Positions 14,116-26,800 are shown, numbered from the stretch's first letter. The stretch is 64,000 nt of DNA from Glycera tridactyla (GCA_965644265.1 OZ286460.1:64852001-64916000); one strand, 5' to 3'. Numbers and translations: made by a program. The notes: generated from the letters alone by a model not told the origin.

Positions 14116-17100
14116 CCGTTTGTGATGGTGTGTTCATGAATGGGCTATTCGTCATGAGCTTTTCGTATGTAATCAGCATATGATTATTTCACTTCATCTT
14201 GGTTGAATGTTTGTTTACTTGCAGACGTTCCAGGTCGTGGGGCGTGACAAGAACCTGTTCCGGTTCAGCAGTGCCAAGGCTCTTTTCCTCCTCAGCCCAT
14301 TCAACCCCATCCGAAGATCTGCCATCTATATTCTCACTCATCCATATCCTTTTTACTGCAATACTAGAAAAGTATCGGTCCGAGAATGTTTGTGATGTGT
14401 GGTGCATCTCAAGGTTCTTTCATTGTCCTGTAGACTCGTATACACACAAACACGCGCGCGCATAGGGAAACATGTACACATACCTCCTTCTCCACCCTAT
14501 CTACCGAATTCCTACCGAACTGTCTTTCTGTCTGCCCGTTCAAATCTTCGCTCTAATTGGCAATCAGTACATATTTGAAAATCTCANNNNNNNNNNNNNN
14601 NNNNNNNNNNNNNNNNNNNNNNNNNNNNNNNNNNNNNNNNNNNNNNNNNNNNNNNNNNNNNNNNNNNNNNNNNNNNNNNNNNNNNNNNNNNNNNNNNNNN
14701 NNNNNNNNNNNNNNNNNAATGCAGCCGGACATAAAAGTGACAATTCTACTCACTAAAAATGTTTCCTATGGGATATATGCGTATGAGAAACAAAGGTGCG
14801 ATTCACAAAAACGCAGGTGGGTGAAAACGCTCTTTCTGTAAACCAACACTTTGGACGTGTCAAGTACAAATATAAATTTCGATATTCAAAATCATATTTC
14901 AAATTGGAGTACACCAAAACAAGGTAAGGTTTAATTGTGTGGGTAAAATATCCACATTGCCACATATGACTTTGGGCAAAATCATTTTTCATCTTTTGAA
15001 ACAGCATTGATATATTTTTAGCGGACATCGAACCTTTCACGACTGTTTTCAACAATGTTCAGTGATGCTATTTGGCCCACGAACTTTGTTAAATTCCAGT
15101 CAGCAAATCATCCCGTGAAATTTGATAATCTTAATTCATTCTATCTTGATTGACTCTATCCATCTGGTCTCTTCATCATTTGAGAGCAAGCTTTACGATC
15201 AAGGACAACGATTCTTTCATCTTTATTTTCTCTCGGAATCTATATTTCCACCATCATATTCGGTGTGAGCTTTCAATAGTTCCCCAATCTATATCCATCA
15301 GTTCTAGCATTTCTTTTCCCGAAGGGAGAGAGATATTCTCGATTATACCACAGATACGTATCTTCTCCGCATGCAGATTGAAGTCCTTGGCTGAGATTAT
15401 ATTTCCAAATTCATATCACCCTCCCACGAAATTGCGAAAATGAGTCAGTCGATATCTGTGGTATAAAAGCAAACCGTCATGCCATGGAAGATACAAGCTG
15501 ATTCTTGCGAGGATTGTGATTTGTACTTTTAACTGGTATGATCTCGAAGTGTGCTATCCACCCACTTTTTTCTTCCCCATTCTTCTCGCTTTTGGTTAGT
15601 GGGCAACTCTCATCTTGTTTGAAGTACGCATATCCCCCAATATGATTAATGCTCTATTTTCAGATCATTCGACATACCCTTTCTGTATTATCTAAGTTAT
15701 ACCATCGATAGGTACAAATATGTACTCGGTGCGCATTATTGAAAGAACTTTACATTGGTTGCAGATCTCATTTCAATTCATATATGAAACAAAACCCCAT
15801 TGGATATCCAAAGGAATTTTCATGGTAGGAACAACCAAATCGTATGCGTCGTAATTTTGGTGAATATCCATGGGTTTTTGCATTAGTAGATGAACTAGGA
15901 TCAGACCTGATGTGCTACGGAATTTATTGATAATTTGTCTACAGGCCTTTGATGAAATAGTACGGTTAAATTGGGACATACTAACTTTCAAAGACCTCAA
16001 CCAGCCAAGTCATCTACTTTCCCTTGCCTGTGTGTGCATTTCTGATCACATCGGTGATTGTCAATCCACCTCAATTTACCACTTTCACTTACTTTCACCT
16101 CTACCTACCCTCTATACCATCTACATGCATATACTTGCTTTGTTGTTGTCTCCATGCATTACTTTGATTTCGAAAAAAAAATCAGAATTAAGGATGGTAG
16201 GACAGGAAGATAAGTTATTCGGGTACCGTCGACCAAAATATGGCAGGAGTTCGGTGGAGAGTTGCTATGAATCTAAAAATGTAAATGAATTCGCTTATTG
16301 GGGAATTAGGGGTGAAATTTCAGAGAGTATCATCCAGGATGGGAGGCAATATGGATTTTCCTCATAGTTGTTCAAGAGTTATGAACATAGATAGTAATGA
16401 ATACATGAAGTTCTAGTGCGCTGCGGAATATGAAGTCTGTAGGTGATAACATGAAAAAGCCAAGTTGCTGTCTTGATCTGCAGAGCTTCCTATGAAGTTT
16501 CATCTATTGGAGCCTGCTGTGGATCTAAAGGTTCACGTAGGCAGCCAGCATCTCCTCAGATAGCATGCATCATTTTTAGGATTGAGATTTGAAATTGTTC
16601 CCACGAAGGATAATAAAGCCTCCTCTTTCTTTGTCTCCTTCCTGATCATAGCTCGAACTGCCTAGCACATAGGAGCACCATGGTTCGACATTTCGATGGA
16701 AGTCATCGTGTATTCTTCCGATGTACCATTTTGCACAAAGATCACGATCTGAACGAATGCAACGATTGTCTCCATCAAAGGGACGATAATCTCGGCACCG
16801 ACGTGTCAGAATAGCTTCAAGTTTGCAGTAATCCGTTCTTGTTAGCTCTAGATTATAACTGTTTCGGAAAGATACTTAGGAGAGCTCAAATCATGTAGGC
16901 CAATAGGATCGGAGACAGCATATGCAAGCATTACTCTGAATGGCACAAATACGAGTCACGTGCATTGCTCTCATCCATATTCGTGTAGGAACATCAGCCA
17001 ATAAGATCGATTATCTGTTAAAAAGTAGATGTTTGGGCGTAATTCGACATTGCTGATGCTACTACAATATTTCTCGTAGATTTCTCTTTCGGTCTAGTCA

Positions 17101-17358
17101 CTGTGATGATCCAGGGCCAAATATTGATTGCTTCCATCTTCTCTGGTGGAGACAACTTTTTCGGTTATCTTGTGCATGCTTTTTTCTCAAATGATCGCTT
17201 CCTTGACTTTTCTTACAGTCTTTAATTTGTTTATAATGCTGGTCATTATAATTAATTGTGTTTTTATGGCATCAAACGCGGAAATTCCCAACTCAGAGTG
17301 AGTAACAGCTACGTTACTACGTCGTTGTTGTTTGCAGCTGTTTTTAGAGTGCACTATC

Positions 17359-17427
<69 letters not shown>

Positions 17428-20400
17428 AGACAATTTTTCATGAAGTCGCACGTCATATGTAGCAGTGGGATAATTAGGCGAAATAACTGATAGAATATGC
17501 ATGCATGCAAGTGAATGAATACTGTTATGATAATGATGTAGAAGTGCATGAAACATCTATTGAAATCTAATAATTCCTCACTTGGAATTCAGAACATGTG
17601 ATCGATGATATTCTAGTTTTACTACCATGCCAAGTTATCAGTTATTTCCCTAATGTTCTGTCTGTTGGACAGAAAGTAAGTACATTCATGTCATTGTTTG
17701 AACTAATCCAGTTTATCTTCTACAAGAAGCTCGCGCGTGTGTTCATGTCCACCATCACAGGGTCACTCTTCTAATGTGTGGTCAAGGCCGGATGCTGAAA
17801 TATGACCTCATCCAGCCTTTGATCAGTATCAAAATGCTTACTGGATGAATCTTCAGAGCAGAATCAATTTGTCAATGATCAAGGTCTTCAAGGAATACAT
17901 ATCCGATCTATCACTACATTGGGATCGGTGCAATTGAATGTATTTCTTCTCGCCTGATCATCTTTCTTGAACTTCTATGTTAATTGTTTGCATTCTCTAT
18001 CAATCCAAAATGCATCAAAATGGAATCTCATTTAGATCTCACATTCTCGATTGATTCTCCCACAAAAATTTACGCGAAAAGTGATAGAAGCACAATACGC
18101 AAGAAGCCCGATCGCGTGGGATTGGTGCGTTCTATCCGTTTCTTGCGCCTTGACCAGGATGAAACTAGAGCACAAATATCTAGTCTCACATAATTTATGC
18201 CAGCCAGGTTTTGTTACACTATTGTCTAACTGTCTAATTGTCTAACGTTAGATTGCATCAGATATTTTCGCTGATCCGACTAGATCGCATCAGATATTCT
18301 TGACTGATCCGAAAAGCACAGTACCGAACACCAAATATTGTAATGAAGATTATGCTGATGAATCATCGTCGTCCTCGGCTTCATTGTGAGCGATGTCGTA
18401 TTTGTTCTCGATAAAGAACATTTTACTAGTCACGACCATCATGTGGGAAATTGTGATATGAGCCAAAGAGTGCTCTATTACGCCAGAATTTTTCTATACG
18501 GTCAAATTCCGATCGGTTTTTTTTTCGTGAAAGTCTGCCGACAATTATGCGAAAACCACATATCCAAAAGCGACGCGATGATTGAACTAGGGTCATGGAC
18601 CCACTCAAATCATTAGGTAAGTACTTTCACAAAACCAGCATTACATCTAGACTGATCGGAACNNNNNNNNNNNNNNNNNNNNNNNNNNNNNNNNNNNNNN
18701 NNNNNNNNNNNNNNNNNNNNNNNNNNNNNNNNNNNNNNNNNNNNNNNNNNNNNNNNNNNNNNNNNNNNNNNNNNNNNNNNNNNNNNNNNNNNNNNNNNNN
18801 NNNNNNNNNNNNNNNNNNNNNNNNNNNNNNNNNNNNNNNNNNNNNNNNNNNNNNNNNNNNNNNNNNNNNNNNNNNNNNNNNNNNNNNNNNNNNNNNNNNN
18901 NNNNNNNNNNNNNNNNNNNNNNNNNNNNNNNTCCATCCATCGAGTGTCTGAATTTCATGAATTTTTCACCTGCTGTTGGGAACCCAGAAGGAAGAGTTTT
19001 GATTGATCCCATCCATGCTACTTGCATGGGCGTCATCTATACATCCCTCTCTCTGAAACATACAAGCGAACAGATTTTTAGACACATGTCATAGACAATA
19101 CTCACATATATCATCCATCATGTATCAACCTAGCCACCCACACACCCTCTTTCTCATCGACCTATCCTCCAACCTACCAACCCATCGACCTACCTACCTA
19201 CCTGCCTATCACGAACATACACACACAATTCAGGCTGAATATCATGTAACCTAATGGTAGTAACTCTCGTCTCGTCTTTGATGCATGTGTGTGCTTGTTA
19301 TTTCGTCAGTAGTTATGCACGTCTCAGTTACAGATCCAGATTCAGGTGGTTTTTCTATTCGAGTACCACGTAGCAATGTGTACGTCCAACGATTGAAGTG
19401 AAAACGATACATGCAAAAATACCCCATATCGTTCCGTCGAGTACGAGGACAGTGCAAATTTGTACGAAAAGAAAAGGCCTCTGGTTGAATTGATAAAAGA
19501 TTGTATAGACGGCACACACCCACCCACCCACACACACCCACCCACACACACACACACCCAAGGAATCCATGCTTCAAAAGGTCAAACAAGAGGTCAACCA
19601 TTACCATCAGTCTTTCCTTAATTCTGCAAACAGCTTTTAGTCTGTTCATAATGCTAGTCATTATCGTAAACTGCATCTTCATGGCGATCAATAGAACCAT
19701 ACCATACACAGAGTGAGTATCATCATACGCCTGCCTATTCCGAGTTTGTTCTTGCTCGGGATATGATGCCATCATACTGCATTCTGTCGTGCATGCAGGC
19801 ATGCAGTTCCCATCCCTAGAACTAGTACCTATCTCAGGGATGCCAATGAAGGTGCCATGGCACGCGCCAGTTAAACATCCTGCCACAGCACCTTTTAGTG
19901 TCAATGACCCACAACACTGTTGAAGGCAGCTTCCGGATATGCAGGCAGGCCACTGCTGGGAGATCAGTTATGGGGGTATTTTTCAGTGTACGTTTGTTGC
20001 ACATTGCACTGGAGCATACGTCTCGTTTTGTGAAGATGTGAAGGCATGCCCGCTTTTGCACATGAGAGAGCACTTCGAATATGTGATGTTGAGTATCTGT
20101 ATGTTACCTGTTGTACATTTTAAGTAAGCCGGAATATTCTCGTACTTAAGTAGGAGGGTGATATTTACGTTGTCCTTTAGGATGTAAATTATGTATTGCT
20201 GCACGGAATACAGCCACACACTACTAACAATCTATCATTGTGTATGCTTATCAGTATTAGTTTGTACATGCAAAAACTTGAGGACCGGAAGGAAAAAGAT
20301 GGCAGGGACTTTCGTACTTCCTTGATCAAATGGGTGGTGCTTCACGTATCTTAAAGTCTGACTAAGATTATGTGAAACCAGTCATTCTTTACCTATGCTA

Positions 20401-20837: not shown

Positions 20838-23800
20838 CTAATGATGATCATTATTATCATTGTTCAATTTCTCGGTCACCCTCCCCTGGAGCGGATGAAC
20901 GCAACGTATACAGCATTATTATCAATGTTATTATTTCTATTATTATTATTATTATCATTATTATTATTTCTATTATTATTAATATAATTACTACTTTCAT
21001 TATCATCATTATGATCATATGCTCACTATCTTCATTATGATTATTATCCTATTTCAAATCTTCACTGACTCTGTCTGCTGTTTTTTCAGAGCGATATTCA
21101 CGGCCATCTATACATGTGAGGGTCTGGTGAAGATCCTGGCTCGTGGATTCATCCTCGCCCCGTTTACCTACCTTAGAGATATGTGGAACTGGTTGGACTT
21201 CGTAGTAGTATCACTAGCGTACGTTGTATACATCTATCCATCGGCTCGTTTGCTATCGTTTGCTGTGGGCACAATGCAATAACGCTGTACTTAGACATGG
21301 CACACCCGTTACACACCAGTTGGTTCAAACGTCTCTATACAGAAATATATATATATAGAAATGAGAGAATCCGATGTCAGGAGCCCTATTACGAAAACCA
21401 CACCAAAGACCACTAGCGAATATGTAGAGATAGACATGCAGACACACACGAGGACTCACACCAAATAACAACACTCACTCATCAATATGAGCACACACAC
21501 TCTGTCACAAACCAAGCCCAACCCTAAAAGACTCCGTTAGAACGAAGACAGAGTACCTTATAGTACCCATTGAACGGTCACTTTTATGGGGTGGATCCGA
21601 CCATTTTAAATGAGTGTGCATATATTTCAATATAACGAACAGGGTCATCTCATTCGAATCGGGTAACCAACCAATACCTCATATCTAATCCAAGTATCCA
21701 CTGCACCCATACACAAGTGATAAATTCTCATGTGACTATATTCTATTTCACAGGTACATCACAATGGCAGTCAAATTAGGTAATCTCGCCGCCCTCCGTA
21801 CATTCAGAGTGCTTCGAGCACTTAAAACAGTTGCCGTAGTCCCAGGTAGGTGATTTGTTTGAGGTATACAACGTCTTGAGCTTTCCTCACTTGTAATGCT
21901 GCAGTCAAAATTCAAAGTTCGTACTTTTACATTTTATGGATTACCAAGATGACCTAATCCAGTCATGGCTTCGTTCTTTGTGTAGATTGATGTGCTCTAT
22001 GTCGAAAGCAGGAAGATGGCCCATTTATATTAATGGTTACCTGTTTGAGTACAGTTTGACGTTTTGTCGACTCATGCTGAATCATATGAAACTAGAGATG
22101 AGTGAGTTGCTGAAGTGCATAGTTCGATAAGTTACTTTCATTTATCAACATATGACGTTCGTTCCCGAAGATGTTTAAGTGAGAACAAGAAGACAAACAG
22201 GTATTCGATTACGCACAAAGACCACTATATATTATGATTGTACCTGTTGAGTTATTGCTCATTGAAATATTGTTCATTTGACCATCGACACGGTTGCCAG
22301 TGATCTCCGTTTTTTTTGCAGGCTTGAAAACTATCGTGGGTGCCTTAATGGAAGCAGTGAAAAGGTTGCGTGACGTCATGATTCTCAGTGTCTTTGTGCT
22401 GTCCATATTTGCGTTAATTGGCCTTCAAATATACCAGGGCGCGCTCAAACAGAAGTGTATTCTTAAATTACCAGAGGGTTACCAAAACAAGACCCCAGAG
22501 GAACAACAAGTGGAGTGGTGGGAGAATGAAAGTAAGTGACAGTGCTTCGTATCAATATCATCTATATTTTCTATTTCTATATCATCAACCAGTCATGATT
22601 TATATATCTGCTCCATNNNNNNNNNNNNNNNNNNNNNNNNNNNNNNNNNNNNNNNNNNNNNNNNNNNNNNNNNNNNNNNNNNNNNNNNNNNNNNNNNNNN
22701 NNNNNNNNNNNNNNNNNNNNNNNNNNNNNNNNNNNNNNNNNNNNNNNNNNNNNNNNNNNNNNNNNNNNNNNNNNNNNNNNNNNNNNNNNNNNNNNNNNNN
22801 NNNNNNNNNNNNNNNNNNNNNNNNNNNNNNNNNNNNNNNNNNNNNNNNNNNNNNNNNNNNNNNNNNNCACCAGCATGTACATAAATCCAATCACTGACCC
22901 TGAAGAGAATATTTTTCACCCGGGAAATCGCTTTCCCACCCTATAGGTGAAAATTTTAATGGACATCAATTGTGCACGATGCAGCTCAGCTGATCTCGAT
23001 ATCAGTCTATCAGTTGTGTCAGTAATTGAACCATCCTGCATTAAGGTTGGTCTGAGTGATATAGGCAGAAAAAACACTCCCCGACTCTCAATCAACTGGC
23101 CTATATACTACTATACTACAATATACTTAAGTTGTATTATATTATAATCTTTGACTAATACAGTGAATTTATATGTGTATTATATTGAAATGTATGTCCA
23201 ATTGTTGCTAAACTCTGAGAGTGTTTCATTTTTGAGTATAAATGATGAGAAGCATCCTTGCAACCTCGAATCGACCACTCGAATCTGGTGCGAATATTGT
23301 CATGCAAATGTCCTATCACATATCATCATGTTTGTATATCATTTGTAAATATACCCTATGCCAATGTTATTGCTACAGTTTTCATCAGGAGCCAGTGGAG
23401 AAATGAACAACATAGCTGGCAGAATTATGCTGGGAGAGCGAATGCAGGAGGGAGTTCCAGTGGATTTTACCACGCGATACAAAATCCTAATTTTTTCCAT
23501 GAAATGACAATTTTCTAATATAAATCTTGAAGTCACTGTCTCGAGATTTTAGTTGTAATATACTACAGTACGAGAGATACTTTCTGTACACTTCCTCCCA
23601 CCACCAGCCAAAAATGTAACACACAACGCGATATTCGAGTCGTGATTTGACGTTGACATAAGCAAACAACGATTTCTGCCCTACATTAAAAACTCATCAC
23701 AAGGAAAATGCAGTTTGCAAATTTACCATTAGTTTCTCCCACTATTGCAACTGTGTCCAGGTGTTTGACTGAGCAGCAAGCAGAAGAGATGTCATCGCTA

Positions 23801-26800
23801 ACAGGCATCCCTCGACGTTGTTCGTACGTGATGGCGAGGCATGGCCTCACCTTATGTCTCTGGCGAGTGCACGAAATGCACATTCACGACAAAACCGACT
23901 ACGCTTCTTCACATTTGTTCAACAGTGCCGACACAAGTTCACTTTACCGTTTATCTTTGATTTCTCAGTGCGTTCAGAACAATTGCAATACACGCGAATG
24001 CTGATTCCTGAAGAAGGAAGGAGGCCGTACCTCTTCAAGGTGCATGCCTTTGCCCATGCTTATCGCTATTCTTTCTTTACAGCTAATTGGTATATAATGG
24101 AGAACGGTGGCCCAAAATTATGTGGCTCGGCCGGTGATGCTGGGTAAGTACCAGATGGTTATACATACAAGAAAGTCATGAGTTCTCTTCTCTCCACAGA
24201 TAACTGGTTTAAAATGGATGACGGGAAATCTAAATTATGTGGCACGGCGGGTGACGCTGGGTGAGTCCAAGATACATTTGGGATACGCTGCATTTTGAGC
24301 GATGTTGACCCGAATGCTCCTTGGTTAAGTGCTGTGACTGCCTATCTGGCATTTTGTTCCCTGATTTCAAGTTTACTCGATCCTCCGCGGTTTCTTTATT
24401 TCCAATTTCACCGCTGCCAACCTCTTTCTCTGCCTATCCTCAATCTTCTCTCACTTCGCTCGATTGTCTCAACCAGGGAATCATTTCGACGAAGTGCGTG
24501 TGGGAGGACTCAAATTGGGTGTTTTCGGAGGCTATGGATTTCTCTGAAATCTATAGTGACCTAGGGCACCTACCACAATACTGAGTGCCCTCATTCTCGA
24601 GTGAAACGGTGCCCTGATCTACTACCTTCATGTTGTATCTCAGATCTAGAAATGTAGTCAAACTTCCTGTCGAATGAAAATGTGATTACAAAAATTATCT
24701 GACATGTCATGATCATCGAACCATCTCCACCGAGCCTAGGGGATACAAACCACTTATGCTGGCAATCAAAGATGAATACGCTATCCATGCTACAGAATCT
24801 TCTCCAGATGTATTGTTTATTGTTCACCCCGCTCCTGTAGATCATTGAATGAGTGGGATGAGTAATCATCATACATTTGCCTCAGTGGTAGCATACTGGG
24901 CCGGCGTGCAATGGGTCTGGGGTTCAATCCCCAGTCCTACCATGCAGGAAAGTTTCACCCTTCATCTTTGCTCCTCCTTGACAAGTGGTCTGATTTAGCC
25001 CACTCAAGTGCAGAAAGTGGACCTTAGATCTCAACATTTCCATTTCCTGTTAGATCATGTTCTGATAGCCGTAGTCTTGTGTGGTCCTTAATGTCTTAGT
25101 CACGAGCTCATTTGACGGGATTTCTCTCACTTTTCTTCCCTATTATCACTCTCGATTATCGCTTATATGTATAGTGATGTCATCCAAGTCCCTTGTAGCC
25201 GTTAAACAGTGCGCTTTGCTGTTGTCAAGTATATTGTGATCTAGAAAATCAATCTTTTTCCATGGAGTCCTCGCTTTTTAGCTGATGCTTATTCGAAAAT
25301 TCCCATTCACCGATGCTATATTCGTTCTATGTCGTAGATGTCCAATATGTGCTACGCAATCATTTCGAAGTATGCTTTGCTTTAAAAATAGTCCTTGTCC
25401 GAAATAATGTCCTGTTTGTAGCTGTTGCTTACAGTCAAATTACCAGGAGATCATCAATGTTTCCAATTCACCAGTCTATAGAATGTCGGAACTTGAGAAT
25501 AGATGTCATCGAATGATATATCCCCTACCTCACAGGAAATCAGTCTTACACAACATTGTTCAAACACTCAAATATAGCAGGTGTCATTAAATACTCGCAA
25601 AAATAGATCCAACCTTCAAGTGTATTCGAGAGATGTTATTCGAAGCTATTGCATTTACGCATGTCTCACACGCTTCATTAGTGCTTCTACCGATAGTACG
25701 ATGTAACCATCTGTCCTAGTCATAAAAACCAAGCATACGTCGGGGAAGATCTATTCTGATATAGTCTTCATCTGATAAGCTTCCCCACCTTAAGAAGGCA
25801 TCCGTATGTTATCCCACACTAGCGTATATGTGCGGCACAGCGATTGCTCCAGCAAATATATTCGATCCATGATTTTTTTTCTCAACTATGCTTAGCTTTC
25901 TAGATGCCCATGTCCATGTTGCCTTTCAACGATCTATCCTGACGAATCGGCAGTGGTTTCTGAATTTCCGTATTTATTGTGTACAGTGGACCACGAAATA
26001 GGAGGGTGATTGTCTGTCAGAGAGTTGTAGAGGACTTCCGATATATGAATACAAAAACACATTTGTAATTCGAGATACCGGAGTATCTCAAAATGCATAG
26101 TTAGCGTGGATGTTTCCAAGCTCAGCCTGTTTTGGACAAAGAAACAGGATTACCCACATAAATTTGGAAATGAACTTCTCATATCAAATAGCATCCGCCT
26201 TAGGCTATAATACTACTGATAATGATAATGATTAATGATAATAATAATATTCCATGTAAGTGAAGAGTGCACTCAACTATGAAGTGGATGAATAGTCTTC
26301 ATCAACGTGAAAAACCAACGAGTTTCATACATATGAATACTCAGTCTTATGATGCCATGTGTGTGCCCTGAAATCTAGTGTGTCTTGCGGTGGTTTGATT
26401 AGAGCTTGGTCAATGTCTGCTGTCTGTTAGTCAGTAAGAAGCTTGTAGACAAGTACAATGAAATATTCATGTGATAGGATGATTCCTGCTAAGGATGATA
26501 AGTGTAGGTGATGCATTCTGTTCCCAAACGTTTCGGTCCGCTTCTGGTAGAGCTATCAGCGTCAATAGCTGGAGGGAGAATAGCGATAATAATGATAATA
26601 ATGTCAATAATGATAATAAAGATAATAATTATAATTATAATGATGATAATGATGATAATANNNNNNNNNNNNNNNNNNNNNNNNNNNNNNNNNNNNNNNN
26701 NNNNNNNNNNNNNNNNNNNNNNNNNNNNNNNNNNNNNNNNNNNNNNNNNNNNNNNNNNNNNNNNNNNNNNNNNNNNNNNNNNNNNNNNNNNNNNNNNNNN

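What the first reader, a model, noticed from the sequence alone, without database searches (positions are those of the whole stretch)
24083..24260. Tandem, apparently mutually exclusive exons in the domain I extracellular turret of Nav1
Seen: two paralogous 61-nt exons, [20 protein letters not shown] and [20 protein letters not shown]. Each has a strong acceptor and donor and identical phases (1-2), and they are separated by only 56 nt. Including both or neither shifts the frame, and so short a spacer should sterically hinder joining them. Both keep the turret Cys and appear intact. Known: described Nav mutually exclusive exons lie in DI S3-S4 and DIII S3-S4 (vertebrates) and DII S4-S5 and DIII S3-S4 (insects). 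I do not recall one in the DI S5-P loop, which lines the outer vestibule where peptide toxins and auxiliary subunits can contact the channel. Inference: a splice switch that remodels turret charge (G1 has E,K,D; G2 has K,D,D,K,K,D) and possibly toxin sensitivity or trafficking by tissue or stage.
Basis: partly seen in the sequence, partly recalled or inferred. Interest (0 to 1): 0.85.

Follow-up and report, generated by a model that had tools for sequence, protein, structure and literature searches.

The report
Twin swappable sodium-channel turret exons
A probable annelid worm's nerve sodium-channel gene holds two slightly different copies of a tiny exon for the outer mouth of the pore, and public RNA contigs show each message carrying one or the other, which gives two channel versions that differ in charge and in a sugar-attachment site.

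Summary
Two 61-nt exons (24083-24143 and 24200-24260) are 46/61 nt identical. Both have AG/GT sites, both run phase 1 to phase 2, and they lie 56 nt apart in the domain I S5-P loop of a Nav1-type gene.

Exon-only, RNA-like contigs from public runs join the upstream exon to G1 and G1 to the downstream exon. In one of the same runs they also join the upstream exon to G2 and G2 to the downstream exon. No G1-G2 or skip-both junction was seen. The pair is therefore used, one exon at a time.

Including both or neither shifts the frame into early stops.

Seven related annelid-like loci have only one copy, so the duplication is lineage-specific.

G1 keeps a widely conserved N-x-S/T sequon at the exon junction (NET). 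G2 destroys it (NEN) and adds charged residues. Both copies keep the core turret cysteine.

I found no paper describing a Nav1 alternative exon at this position. Functional effects are untested. This is a new variant of a familiar kind, in a genome that earlier scan notes report as rich in such exon arrays.

The parts
22322..22531 (+). Constitutive exon F: DI S4-S5 linker, S5 and the start of the extracellular turret (...[26 protein letters not shown] plus 1 base)
   Evidence: Acceptor AG at 22320-21 and donor A|GTAAGT at 22532. Best PDB matches are Nav1 alpha subunits, E=4.6e-23. An RNA-like contig covers 22319-22531.
22532..24082 (+). Intron F-G1 (1551 nt; contains an N run at 22617-22867, left untouched)
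   Evidence: GT..AG joint 22531>24083 in contigs of runs X1 and X2.
24083..24143 (+). Exon G1 (61 nt, phase 1 to 2): (T)[19 protein letters not shown](G). It completes the sequon N-E-T.
   Evidence: Joints 22531>24083 and 24143>27329 in X1 (word depth 9.2) and X2 (4.7).
24144..24199 (+). 56-nt spacer intron between G1 and G2. It has a GTAAGT donor, a pyrimidine tract, a CAG acceptor and no clear CTRAY branch site.
   Evidence: No G1>G2 joint in the contigs. No unusual local RNA structure, z=-0.16.
24200..24260 (+). Exon G2 (61 nt, phase 1 to 2): (N)[19 protein letters not shown](G). The junction reads N-E-N, so the sequon is lost.
   Evidence: Joints 22531>24200 and 24260>27329 in X1 (word depth 2.8).
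24261..27328 (+). Intron G2-H (3068 nt; contains an N run at 26661-26822 and a very high-copy repeat at about 24881-25045)
   Evidence: GT..AG joints to 27329.
27329..27474 (+). Constitutive exon H: end of the turret, P1 helix, selectivity-filter Asp and P2 ([47 protein letters not shown])
   Evidence: Acceptor CAG at 27326-28 and donor GTGAGT at 27475. Contigs cover 27328-27474.

Best explanation
G1 and G2 are a real pair of homologous, mutually exclusive exons. They arose by a 117-nt tandem duplication (exon plus 56 nt) of the small ancient exon that encodes the C-terminal part of the DI S5-P1 extracellular loop of a Nav1 sodium channel.

Each mRNA takes one copy. This gives two channels that are identical except for 8 of 21 residues in the turret. 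G1 is the more abundant form in the runs seen. It keeps the widely conserved N-x-S/T glycosylation sequon at the F/G junction (NET) and has net charge -1. G2 abolishes that sequon (NEN) and carries six charged residues (net 0), two of them extra lysines. Both keep the second of the four core DI turret cysteines and the KLCG.AGDAG tail.

Shown: anatomy, reading-frame logic, use of both exons in RNA, and a single copy in relatives.

Inferred:
- Productive exclusivity is guaranteed by the frame-shift, since 61 = 3n+1, and by decay of double or null forms.
- The short spacer, with its weak branch site, may also disfavour G1-G2 splicing. I put this at about 40% as a real contributor.
- The biological point of the switch is to change surface glycan and charge of the outer vestibule, and so folding or trafficking, or access of cations, toxins or partner proteins.
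For: - Sequence anatomy and frame.
- coverage by contigs of runs X1-X3 is confined to exons F, G1, G2 and H, apart from repeats. GT..AG joints are 22531>24083 and 24143>27329 (X1 9.2, X2 4.7), and 22531>24200 and 24260>27329 (X1 2.8). The sides of about 26-30 nt fit my reading of two alternative paths in a k=31 assembly graph.
- No joint 24143>24200 or 22531>27329.
- Unique locus in the genome. No third copy.
- The gene is Nav1-type. The G exon aligns to human Nav1.6 residues about 310-331 in the DI loop.
- The junction sequon is present in about two thirds of 87 distinct Nav1 turret strings, including Helobdella, Hirudo, insects and vertebrates, and in the single-copy orthologues of Capitella and of L011 and L012.
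- G1 and G2 share AGDAG against SQDAG, SSDAG or SSDTG in relatives. That fits a duplication after those lineages split.
- Turret cysteines are essential in this channel family (PMC6259924).
Against: - The RNA evidence is thin: one contig per junction, word depths 2.8-9.2, three runs of one 2018 study, and a library type that is not on record. I call it RNA only because coverage is exon-only with exact splice joints.
- Contigs drop rare forms, so the absence of G1-G2 or skip forms is weak.
- The F-exon contig differs from the window at 4 bases, so the runs come from another individual, population or very close species.
- Seven related loci have one copy only. There is therefore no cross-species evidence of selection on either copy.
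- 20 codons are too few for dN/dS. The copies differ at 8 non-synonymous and 4 synonymous codons.
- No functional data exist.
Confidence: 0.8

Rival explanations
1. G2 is a tolerated, low-use duplicate. It is spliced in at a minority level because it inherited good splice sites, but the G2 channel has no distinct role, and may be a poorly folding, under-glycosylated product.
For: - G2 junctions appear in one run only and at about a third of the G1 depth.
- G2 loses a widely conserved glycosylation sequon.
- The pair is absent from all seven related loci examined.
Against: - At 25% nucleotide divergence the copy is not recent. It still keeps an open frame, both splice sites, the Trp, the core Cys and an almost identical C-terminal half.
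- Its differences are concentrated in the N-terminal half rather than spread at random.
- Earlier scan notes report another twin-exon pair in the same gene and many such arrays in this genome. That suggests the mechanism is in regular use here.
Confidence: 0.15
2. G1 and G2 are two diverged alleles or haplotypes of one exon that the assembler wrongly placed in tandem. The two RNA forms would then be allelic transcripts and not splice isoforms.
For: - No DNA run could be laid on the region, so the tandem arrangement rests on the assembly alone.
- The RNA contigs show allelic or strain differences in exon F.
Against: - Alleles 25% apart within a 61-nt exon, while exons F and H are 98-99% identical to the contigs, are implausible.
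- The spacer carries its own donor, pyrimidine tract and acceptor, and the flanks show the 117-nt duplication register.
- An earlier scan note reports another short-spacer twin pair in the same gene.
Confidence: 0.02
3. Mutual exclusivity is enforced mainly by steric hindrance. On this view the 56-nt spacer is too short for a spliceosome to assemble between the G1 donor and the G2 branch point.
For: - The other introns of this gene that I measured in the window are 450 nt or longer.
- The spacer has no good CTRAY branch site. Any branch point 20-38 nt upstream of the acceptor lies only about 18-36 nt from the donor.
- Human studies use less than 50 nt from donor to branch point as the criterion (PMC5740500).
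- No G1-G2 joint was seen.
Against: - The Capitella orthologue has introns of 50 and 52 nt flanking the same exon.
- In C. elegans only introns under 40 nt are counted as too short (PMC4165533).
- Double-inclusion mRNA would in any case be frame-shifted and probably degraded, so its absence from contigs says little.
Confidence: 0.4

Closest known systems
Vertebrate SCN exon 5N/5A (6N/6A) and SCN8A 18N/18A mutually exclusive exons
   Same: Tandem-duplicated homologous exons of a Nav1 alpha subunit, used one at a time. They change a few extracellular residues, including charge (PMC13011093; PMC12772994).
   Different: Those exons encode the S3-S4 parts of voltage sensors I and III. This pair encodes the S5-P1 pore turret of domain I. 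The vertebrate pairs are ancient and shared across genes and species, whereas this one is lineage-specific: a single copy in seven related loci.
Insect para / Vssc mutually exclusive exons (c/d and k/l from my memory; four IIIS3-S4 exons in Liposcelis, PMC3805903)
   Same: A single-copy invertebrate Nav1 gene diversified by several clusters of alternative homologous exons.
   Different: Different positions. None of the insect clusters lies in the DI pore loop.
Invertebrate Cav3 T-type exon 12a/12b (IIS5-P1 turret)
   Same: Mutually exclusive exons encoding an S5-P1 extracellular turret of a four-domain channel. There, a single turret lysine switches ion preference (PMC9694082; PMC6259924). G2 likewise adds lysines to a turret.
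   Different: That pair lies in domain II of a calcium-channel family, and its exons differ in length and in cysteine number. G1 and G2 have equal length and the same single cysteine. No selectivity data exist here.
C. elegans homologous ME exon clusters with 3n+1 or 3n+2 exons policed by NMD (PMC4165533)
   Same: Exons whose length is not a multiple of three, so double inclusion or skipping is removed by decay. Some of those clusters have very short intervening introns.
   Different: The steric class there has introns under 40 nt and 3n exons. The spacer here is 56 nt and the exons are 3n+1.

Membership tests
Homologous mutually exclusive exon pair (tandem exon duplication) | Two adjacent exons that are homologous and of equal length | tested here: met
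   61 nt each, 46/61 nt identical and 13/21 codons encoding the same residue.
Homologous mutually exclusive exon pair (tandem exon duplication) | Same intron phases and competent splice sites on both copies | tested here: met
   AG...GTAAGT and AG...GTGAGT; both run phase 1 to 2 and fit exon F (phase 1) and exon H (phase 2).
Homologous mutually exclusive exon pair (tandem exon duplication) | Each copy is found in RNA joined to both constitutive neighbours | tested here: met
   Joints F>G1 and G1>H (X1, X2) and F>G2 and G2>H (X1) in exon-only contigs. The support is thin: one contig each.
Homologous mutually exclusive exon pair (tandem exon duplication) | No productive RNA with both copies or neither | tested here: inconclusive
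   No G1>G2 or F>H joint, but depth is low and contigs drop rare forms. Both forms would be frame-shifted with early stops.
Homologous mutually exclusive exon pair (tandem exon duplication) | Both copies maintained in related species (a supporting feature, not a defining one) | tested here: not met
   Capitella L002, Helobdella L003, L004/L005, L008, L011, L012 and L013 each have one G exon of 46-61 nt, 3n+1. No closer relative was available.
Sterically enforced mutually exclusive exons | Distance from the donor to the branch point of the intervening intron is below the organism's minimum for splicing | tested here: inconclusive
   The spacer is 56 nt. The Capitella orthologue splices introns of 50 and 52 nt. 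Published thresholds are under 40 nt in C. elegans and under 50 nt donor to branch point in humans.
Nav1 voltage-gated sodium channel alpha subunit | Closest similarity to Nav1 rather than to Cav, Nav2 or NALCN | tested here: met
   The top PDB hits are all Nav1.x or NavPaS, with Cav hits far weaker. The closest annotated proteins are lophotrochozoan and insect Nav1/para.
Nav1 voltage-gated sodium channel alpha subunit | DI pore signature ([10 protein letters not shown], with the Asp of DEKA) and four core DI turret cysteines | tested here: met
   The spliced translation has KC...LCG...QCP...YTC and [15 protein letters not shown].
Nav1 voltage-gated sodium channel alpha subunit | Lys in DIII and Ala in DIV of the selectivity filter; IFM inactivation motif | not tested
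These lie beyond the window.
Selectivity-switching turret exons (Cav3 12a/12b type) | The alternative S5-P1 turrets differ in length and cysteine number and change ion preference | tested here: not met
   G1 and G2 have the same length and the same single cysteine. Ion selectivity cannot be tested with these tools.

The most novel reading that the evidence does not exclude
The G1/G2 choice is a regulated switch that removes a deeply conserved N-glycan and adds lysines at the rim of the outer vestibule, changing channel trafficking, gating or block by guanidinium or peptide toxins. With the candidate U12/U2-incompatible DI S1 pair and the DIII S1-S2 pair (note s1-302867), one annelid Nav1 gene would encode up to eight combinatorial channels. 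That would be an independent route to the diversity that vertebrates reach with ten genes and insects with para splicing.
Probability: 0.25. Interest if true: 0.7.

Novelty: new variant of a known kind. Interest (0 to 1): 0.5.

Why it matters
Invertebrates usually have a single Nav1 gene, so alternative exons are their main way of making different sodium channels. All described Nav1 exon switches sit in voltage sensors or cytoplasmic linkers. This one alters the pore's extracellular turret instead.

That region carries glycans and disulfides, shapes the charged vestibule, and in vertebrates contacts auxiliary subunits and toxins (from my memory of the Nav1.4-beta1 structure; not checked here).

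A natural pair of turrets differing in 8 residues and one glycan site is a ready-made experiment on what this loop does. It also adds another independently evolved alternative-exon pair in a voltage-gated channel gene.

Tried and rejected
- A first RNA-run search with 7.8 kb of the gene listed nothing. The second, with 2 kb and kind 'any', found three small runs that turned out to be exon-only.
- Local RNA structure around the pair is no stronger than in shuffles, z=-0.16. I found no sign of a docking or selector mechanism, though only 226 nt were folded.
- A search for a third or degenerate copy in the introns and elsewhere in the genome found none.
- Closer relatives could not be found. The nearest F-exon ORFs in the 5.8-billion protein set are only 73-75% identical. 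The Owenia and Lineus genes were not on record as loci. Loci L006, L007, L009 and L010 were too short.
It is annelid-like by best matches and by earlier notes.
- dN/dS was not attempted, because 20 codons without orthologous pairs would be meaningless.
- No structure prediction of the two isoforms was made. A spliced protein has no reference, and I did not type long sequences.
- A weak G-like hit upstream of exon F in L013 (3450-3506, score 42) and another at 14147 (score 34) were taken as chance.
- The N runs were left untouched.

Full report
**Observation**

G1 runs from 24083 to 24143 and G2 from 24200 to 24260. Each is 61 nt, preceded by a pyrimidine tract and CAG, and followed by GTAAGT (G1) or GTGAGT (G2). 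The spacer, 24144-24199, is 56 nt.

The two exons are 46/61 nt identical. The chance of that many matches at p=0.3 is about 3e-13. Similarity continues a little into the flanks, in the register of a 117-nt tandem duplication.

A scan of the two flanking introns on both strands found no third copy. The whole 2.04-Gb assembly holds this stretch only once.

**The gene**

Open stretches on the + strand give a run of sodium-channel exons. The exon just upstream (F, 22322-22531) encodes the DI S4-S5 linker, S5 and the start of the extracellular loop. Its best matches among solved structures are all Nav1 alpha subunits (E=4.6e-23 for Nav1.4), with calcium channels far weaker.

F ends A|GTAAGT, phase 1. 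The next constitutive exon (H, 27329-27474) begins after CAG in phase 2. It encodes QCPTNYTC...[15 protein letters not shown], that is, the end of the loop, the P helices and the DI selectivity-filter aspartate.

Splicing F to G1 to H, or F to G2 to H, gives an open frame with the four core DI turret cysteines (KC, LCG, QCP, YTC). F-G1-G2-H and F-H both run into stops at once.

By alignment of a chiton orthologue to the human Nav1.6 structure, the G exon corresponds to about residues 310-331...NKT|[21 protein letters not shown]|QCPEG.... It is therefore the small ancient exon of the DI loop that all Nav1 genes share. From memory, that exon is 64 nt in vertebrates.

**RNA evidence**

A first search for RNA runs listed none. 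A second found three small 2018 runs of one study whose library type is not on record.

Laid on 22200-27600, their contigs cover only exons F, G1, G2 and H, plus a high-copy repeat and one short intronic piece. They carry four joints with GT..AG ends at exactly the predicted borders:
- 22531>24083 and 24143>27329, in X1 (word depth 9.2) and X2 (4.7).
- 22531>24200 and 24260>27329, in X1 (2.8).

The short sides of 26-30 nt are, in my reading, what two alternative paths in a k=31 assembly graph would give. No joint 24143>24200 and no joint 22531>27329 was reported.

I read this as spliced RNA in which each copy is used singly, both within one sample, with G1 about three times G2. The support is thin: one contig per junction, low depth and one study. 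Contigs also cannot show rare forms.

The F contig differs from the window at four bases, which change three turret residues (E>D, P>L, E>D). The runs therefore come from another individual, population or very close species.

**How exclusivity is enforced**

What the sequence shows is the frame rule. Since 61 = 3n+1, only single inclusion is productive, as in most C. elegans clusters with non-3n exons, which rely on nonsense-mediated decay (PMC4165533).

- For it: the other introns I measured in this gene are 450 nt or more. The spacer lacks a good branch consensus. Any branch point in it would lie roughly 18-36 nt from the donor, below the 50-nt criterion used for human genes (PMC5740500).
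- Against it: in Capitella the orthologous exon (52 nt) is flanked by introns of only 50 and 52 nt. The C. elegans study counts only introns under 40 nt as too short.

Local RNA folding is unremarkable (z=-0.16).

**Relatives**

The closest annotated proteins are lophotrochozoan Nav1 channels: Lineus, Capitella, Helobdella, Owenia, and chiton and other molluscs. Earlier notes of the scan also call this genome a probable annelid.

I fetched genomic loci for Capitella and Helobdella. I also fetched five unannotated annelid-like contigs found through exon-F ORFs, which are 72-77% identical to exon F over its full length (L013: 85% over its first 60 residues). In every one, exons F and H could be placed, and exactly one G exon lies between them. 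Its length is 46-61 nt and always 3n+1. In L012 it is fused to H.

The duplication is therefore specific to the lineage of this genome, as far as the available data reach. Nothing closer than about 75% identity in exon F was in the protein collection.

G1 and G2 share AGDAG where relatives have SQDAG, SSDAG or SSDTG, which fits a duplication after those lineages split. With 15 nucleotide differences, in 4 synonymous and 8 non-synonymous codons, the copies are not recent. Twenty codons without orthologous pairs cannot give a meaningful dN/dS.

**What differs between the isoforms**

All eight amino-acid differences lie in the first 16 of 21 codons. The KLCG.AGDAG half is nearly fixed.

The junction codon is ACT (Thr) with G1 and AAT (Asn) with G2. 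The turret therefore reads WENETNW with G1, which is an N-x-T sequon, and WENENNW with G2, which has none. The single-copy orthologues read NES at this spot (Capitella; Helobdella; L011 and L012). An N-x-S/T directly before the N[WFY][WFY] start of this exon occurs in roughly two thirds of 87 distinct Nav1 turret strings, from annelids, insects and vertebrates (the regex count includes a few false hits).

G2 thus removes a widely conserved potential glycan site. It also raises the number of charged residues from three to six and shifts net charge from -1 to 0, with two extra lysines.

The eight conserved turret cysteines are reported to be required for channel expression (PMC6259924). A single turret lysine in the alternative IIS5-P1 exon of snail Cav3 switches ion preference (PMC9694082). 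A functional effect is therefore conceivable, but none is shown here.

**Comparison with what is known**

Described Nav1 exon switches lie in DI S3-S4 and DIII S3-S4 of vertebrates (2026 review PMC13011093; PMC12772994). They also lie in the voltage-sensor or linker regions of insects (PMC3805903) and in cytoplasmic linkers of an oyster (PMC5295241).

The two broad reviews of Nav and Cav turrets, PMC4436565 and PMC6259924, describe turret splicing only for Cav3 domain II and NALCN.

Six full-text searches found no paper on an alternative exon in the DI S5-P loop of any Nav1. Subscription-only literature was not searched.

The mechanism, homologous mutually exclusive exons from tandem duplication, is thoroughly familiar. 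The position and the glycan toggle are new.

Earlier notes report many such arrays in this same genome (SERCA, ceramide synthase, flotillin, SERINC, TRPC, glycine-receptor-like genes) and a second pair in this very gene. The pair is thus one instance of a genome-wide habit.

**Verdict**

This is a real and used mutually exclusive exon pair (confidence 0.8). It is a new variant of a known kind, of moderate interest. Regulation and function remain open.

Noticed in passing
window 14344; 17199-17296; 19613-19711: The DI S1 exon is present twice, both 80 nt (3n+2): copy a at 17217-17296 (...[26 protein letters not shown]) and copy b at 19632-19711 (...[26 protein letters not shown]). The upstream exon ends with a U12 donor, ATATCCTTT, at 14344. 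Both copies have their own U12 branch site (TTCCTTGAC; TTCCTTAAT) about 10 nt before an AC acceptor, and both end with a U2 donor, GTGAGT. This is a candidate mutually exclusive pair enforced by U12/U2 incompatibility.
   Followed up: partly
window 24881-25045: An intronic element is covered by many contigs at summed word depths of hundreds to thousands in all three runs, with loose ends on both sides. It is a high-copy, transcribed repeat of unknown family.
   Followed up: no
window 22476, 22495, 22496, 22500: All four differences between the RNA contigs and the window in exon F are non-synonymous (E>D, P>L, E>D) and fall within 9 codons of the extracellular turret. G1 and G2 show no listed differences and H shows one. 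The N-terminal part of the turret may be evolving fast or be polymorphic.
   Followed up: partly
L002 2760-2925 (Capitella teleta KB309218.1): The public Capitella gene model (CAPTEDRAFT_210954) appears to read through the 52-nt intron after the G exon, giving ...VCGLTLKSPCFSSCPP. The splice-consistent reading is NWFRPEGAKEPLVCGSG|...CPPNF, with introns of 50 and 52 nt.
   Followed up: partly
L012 1092-1295: In this related Logan contig the G and H exons are one continuous open frame (NWRKTEDNKTILCGMSSDAGQCPDDSEC...). The intron between them has been lost in that lineage.
   Followed up: no
window 26182-26362: A short intronic piece is covered by contigs of all three runs at depth 3-6, with a 1-nt deletion at 26232 and a loose end at 26246. 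It may be a repeat or an unannotated transcribed element.
   Followed up: no
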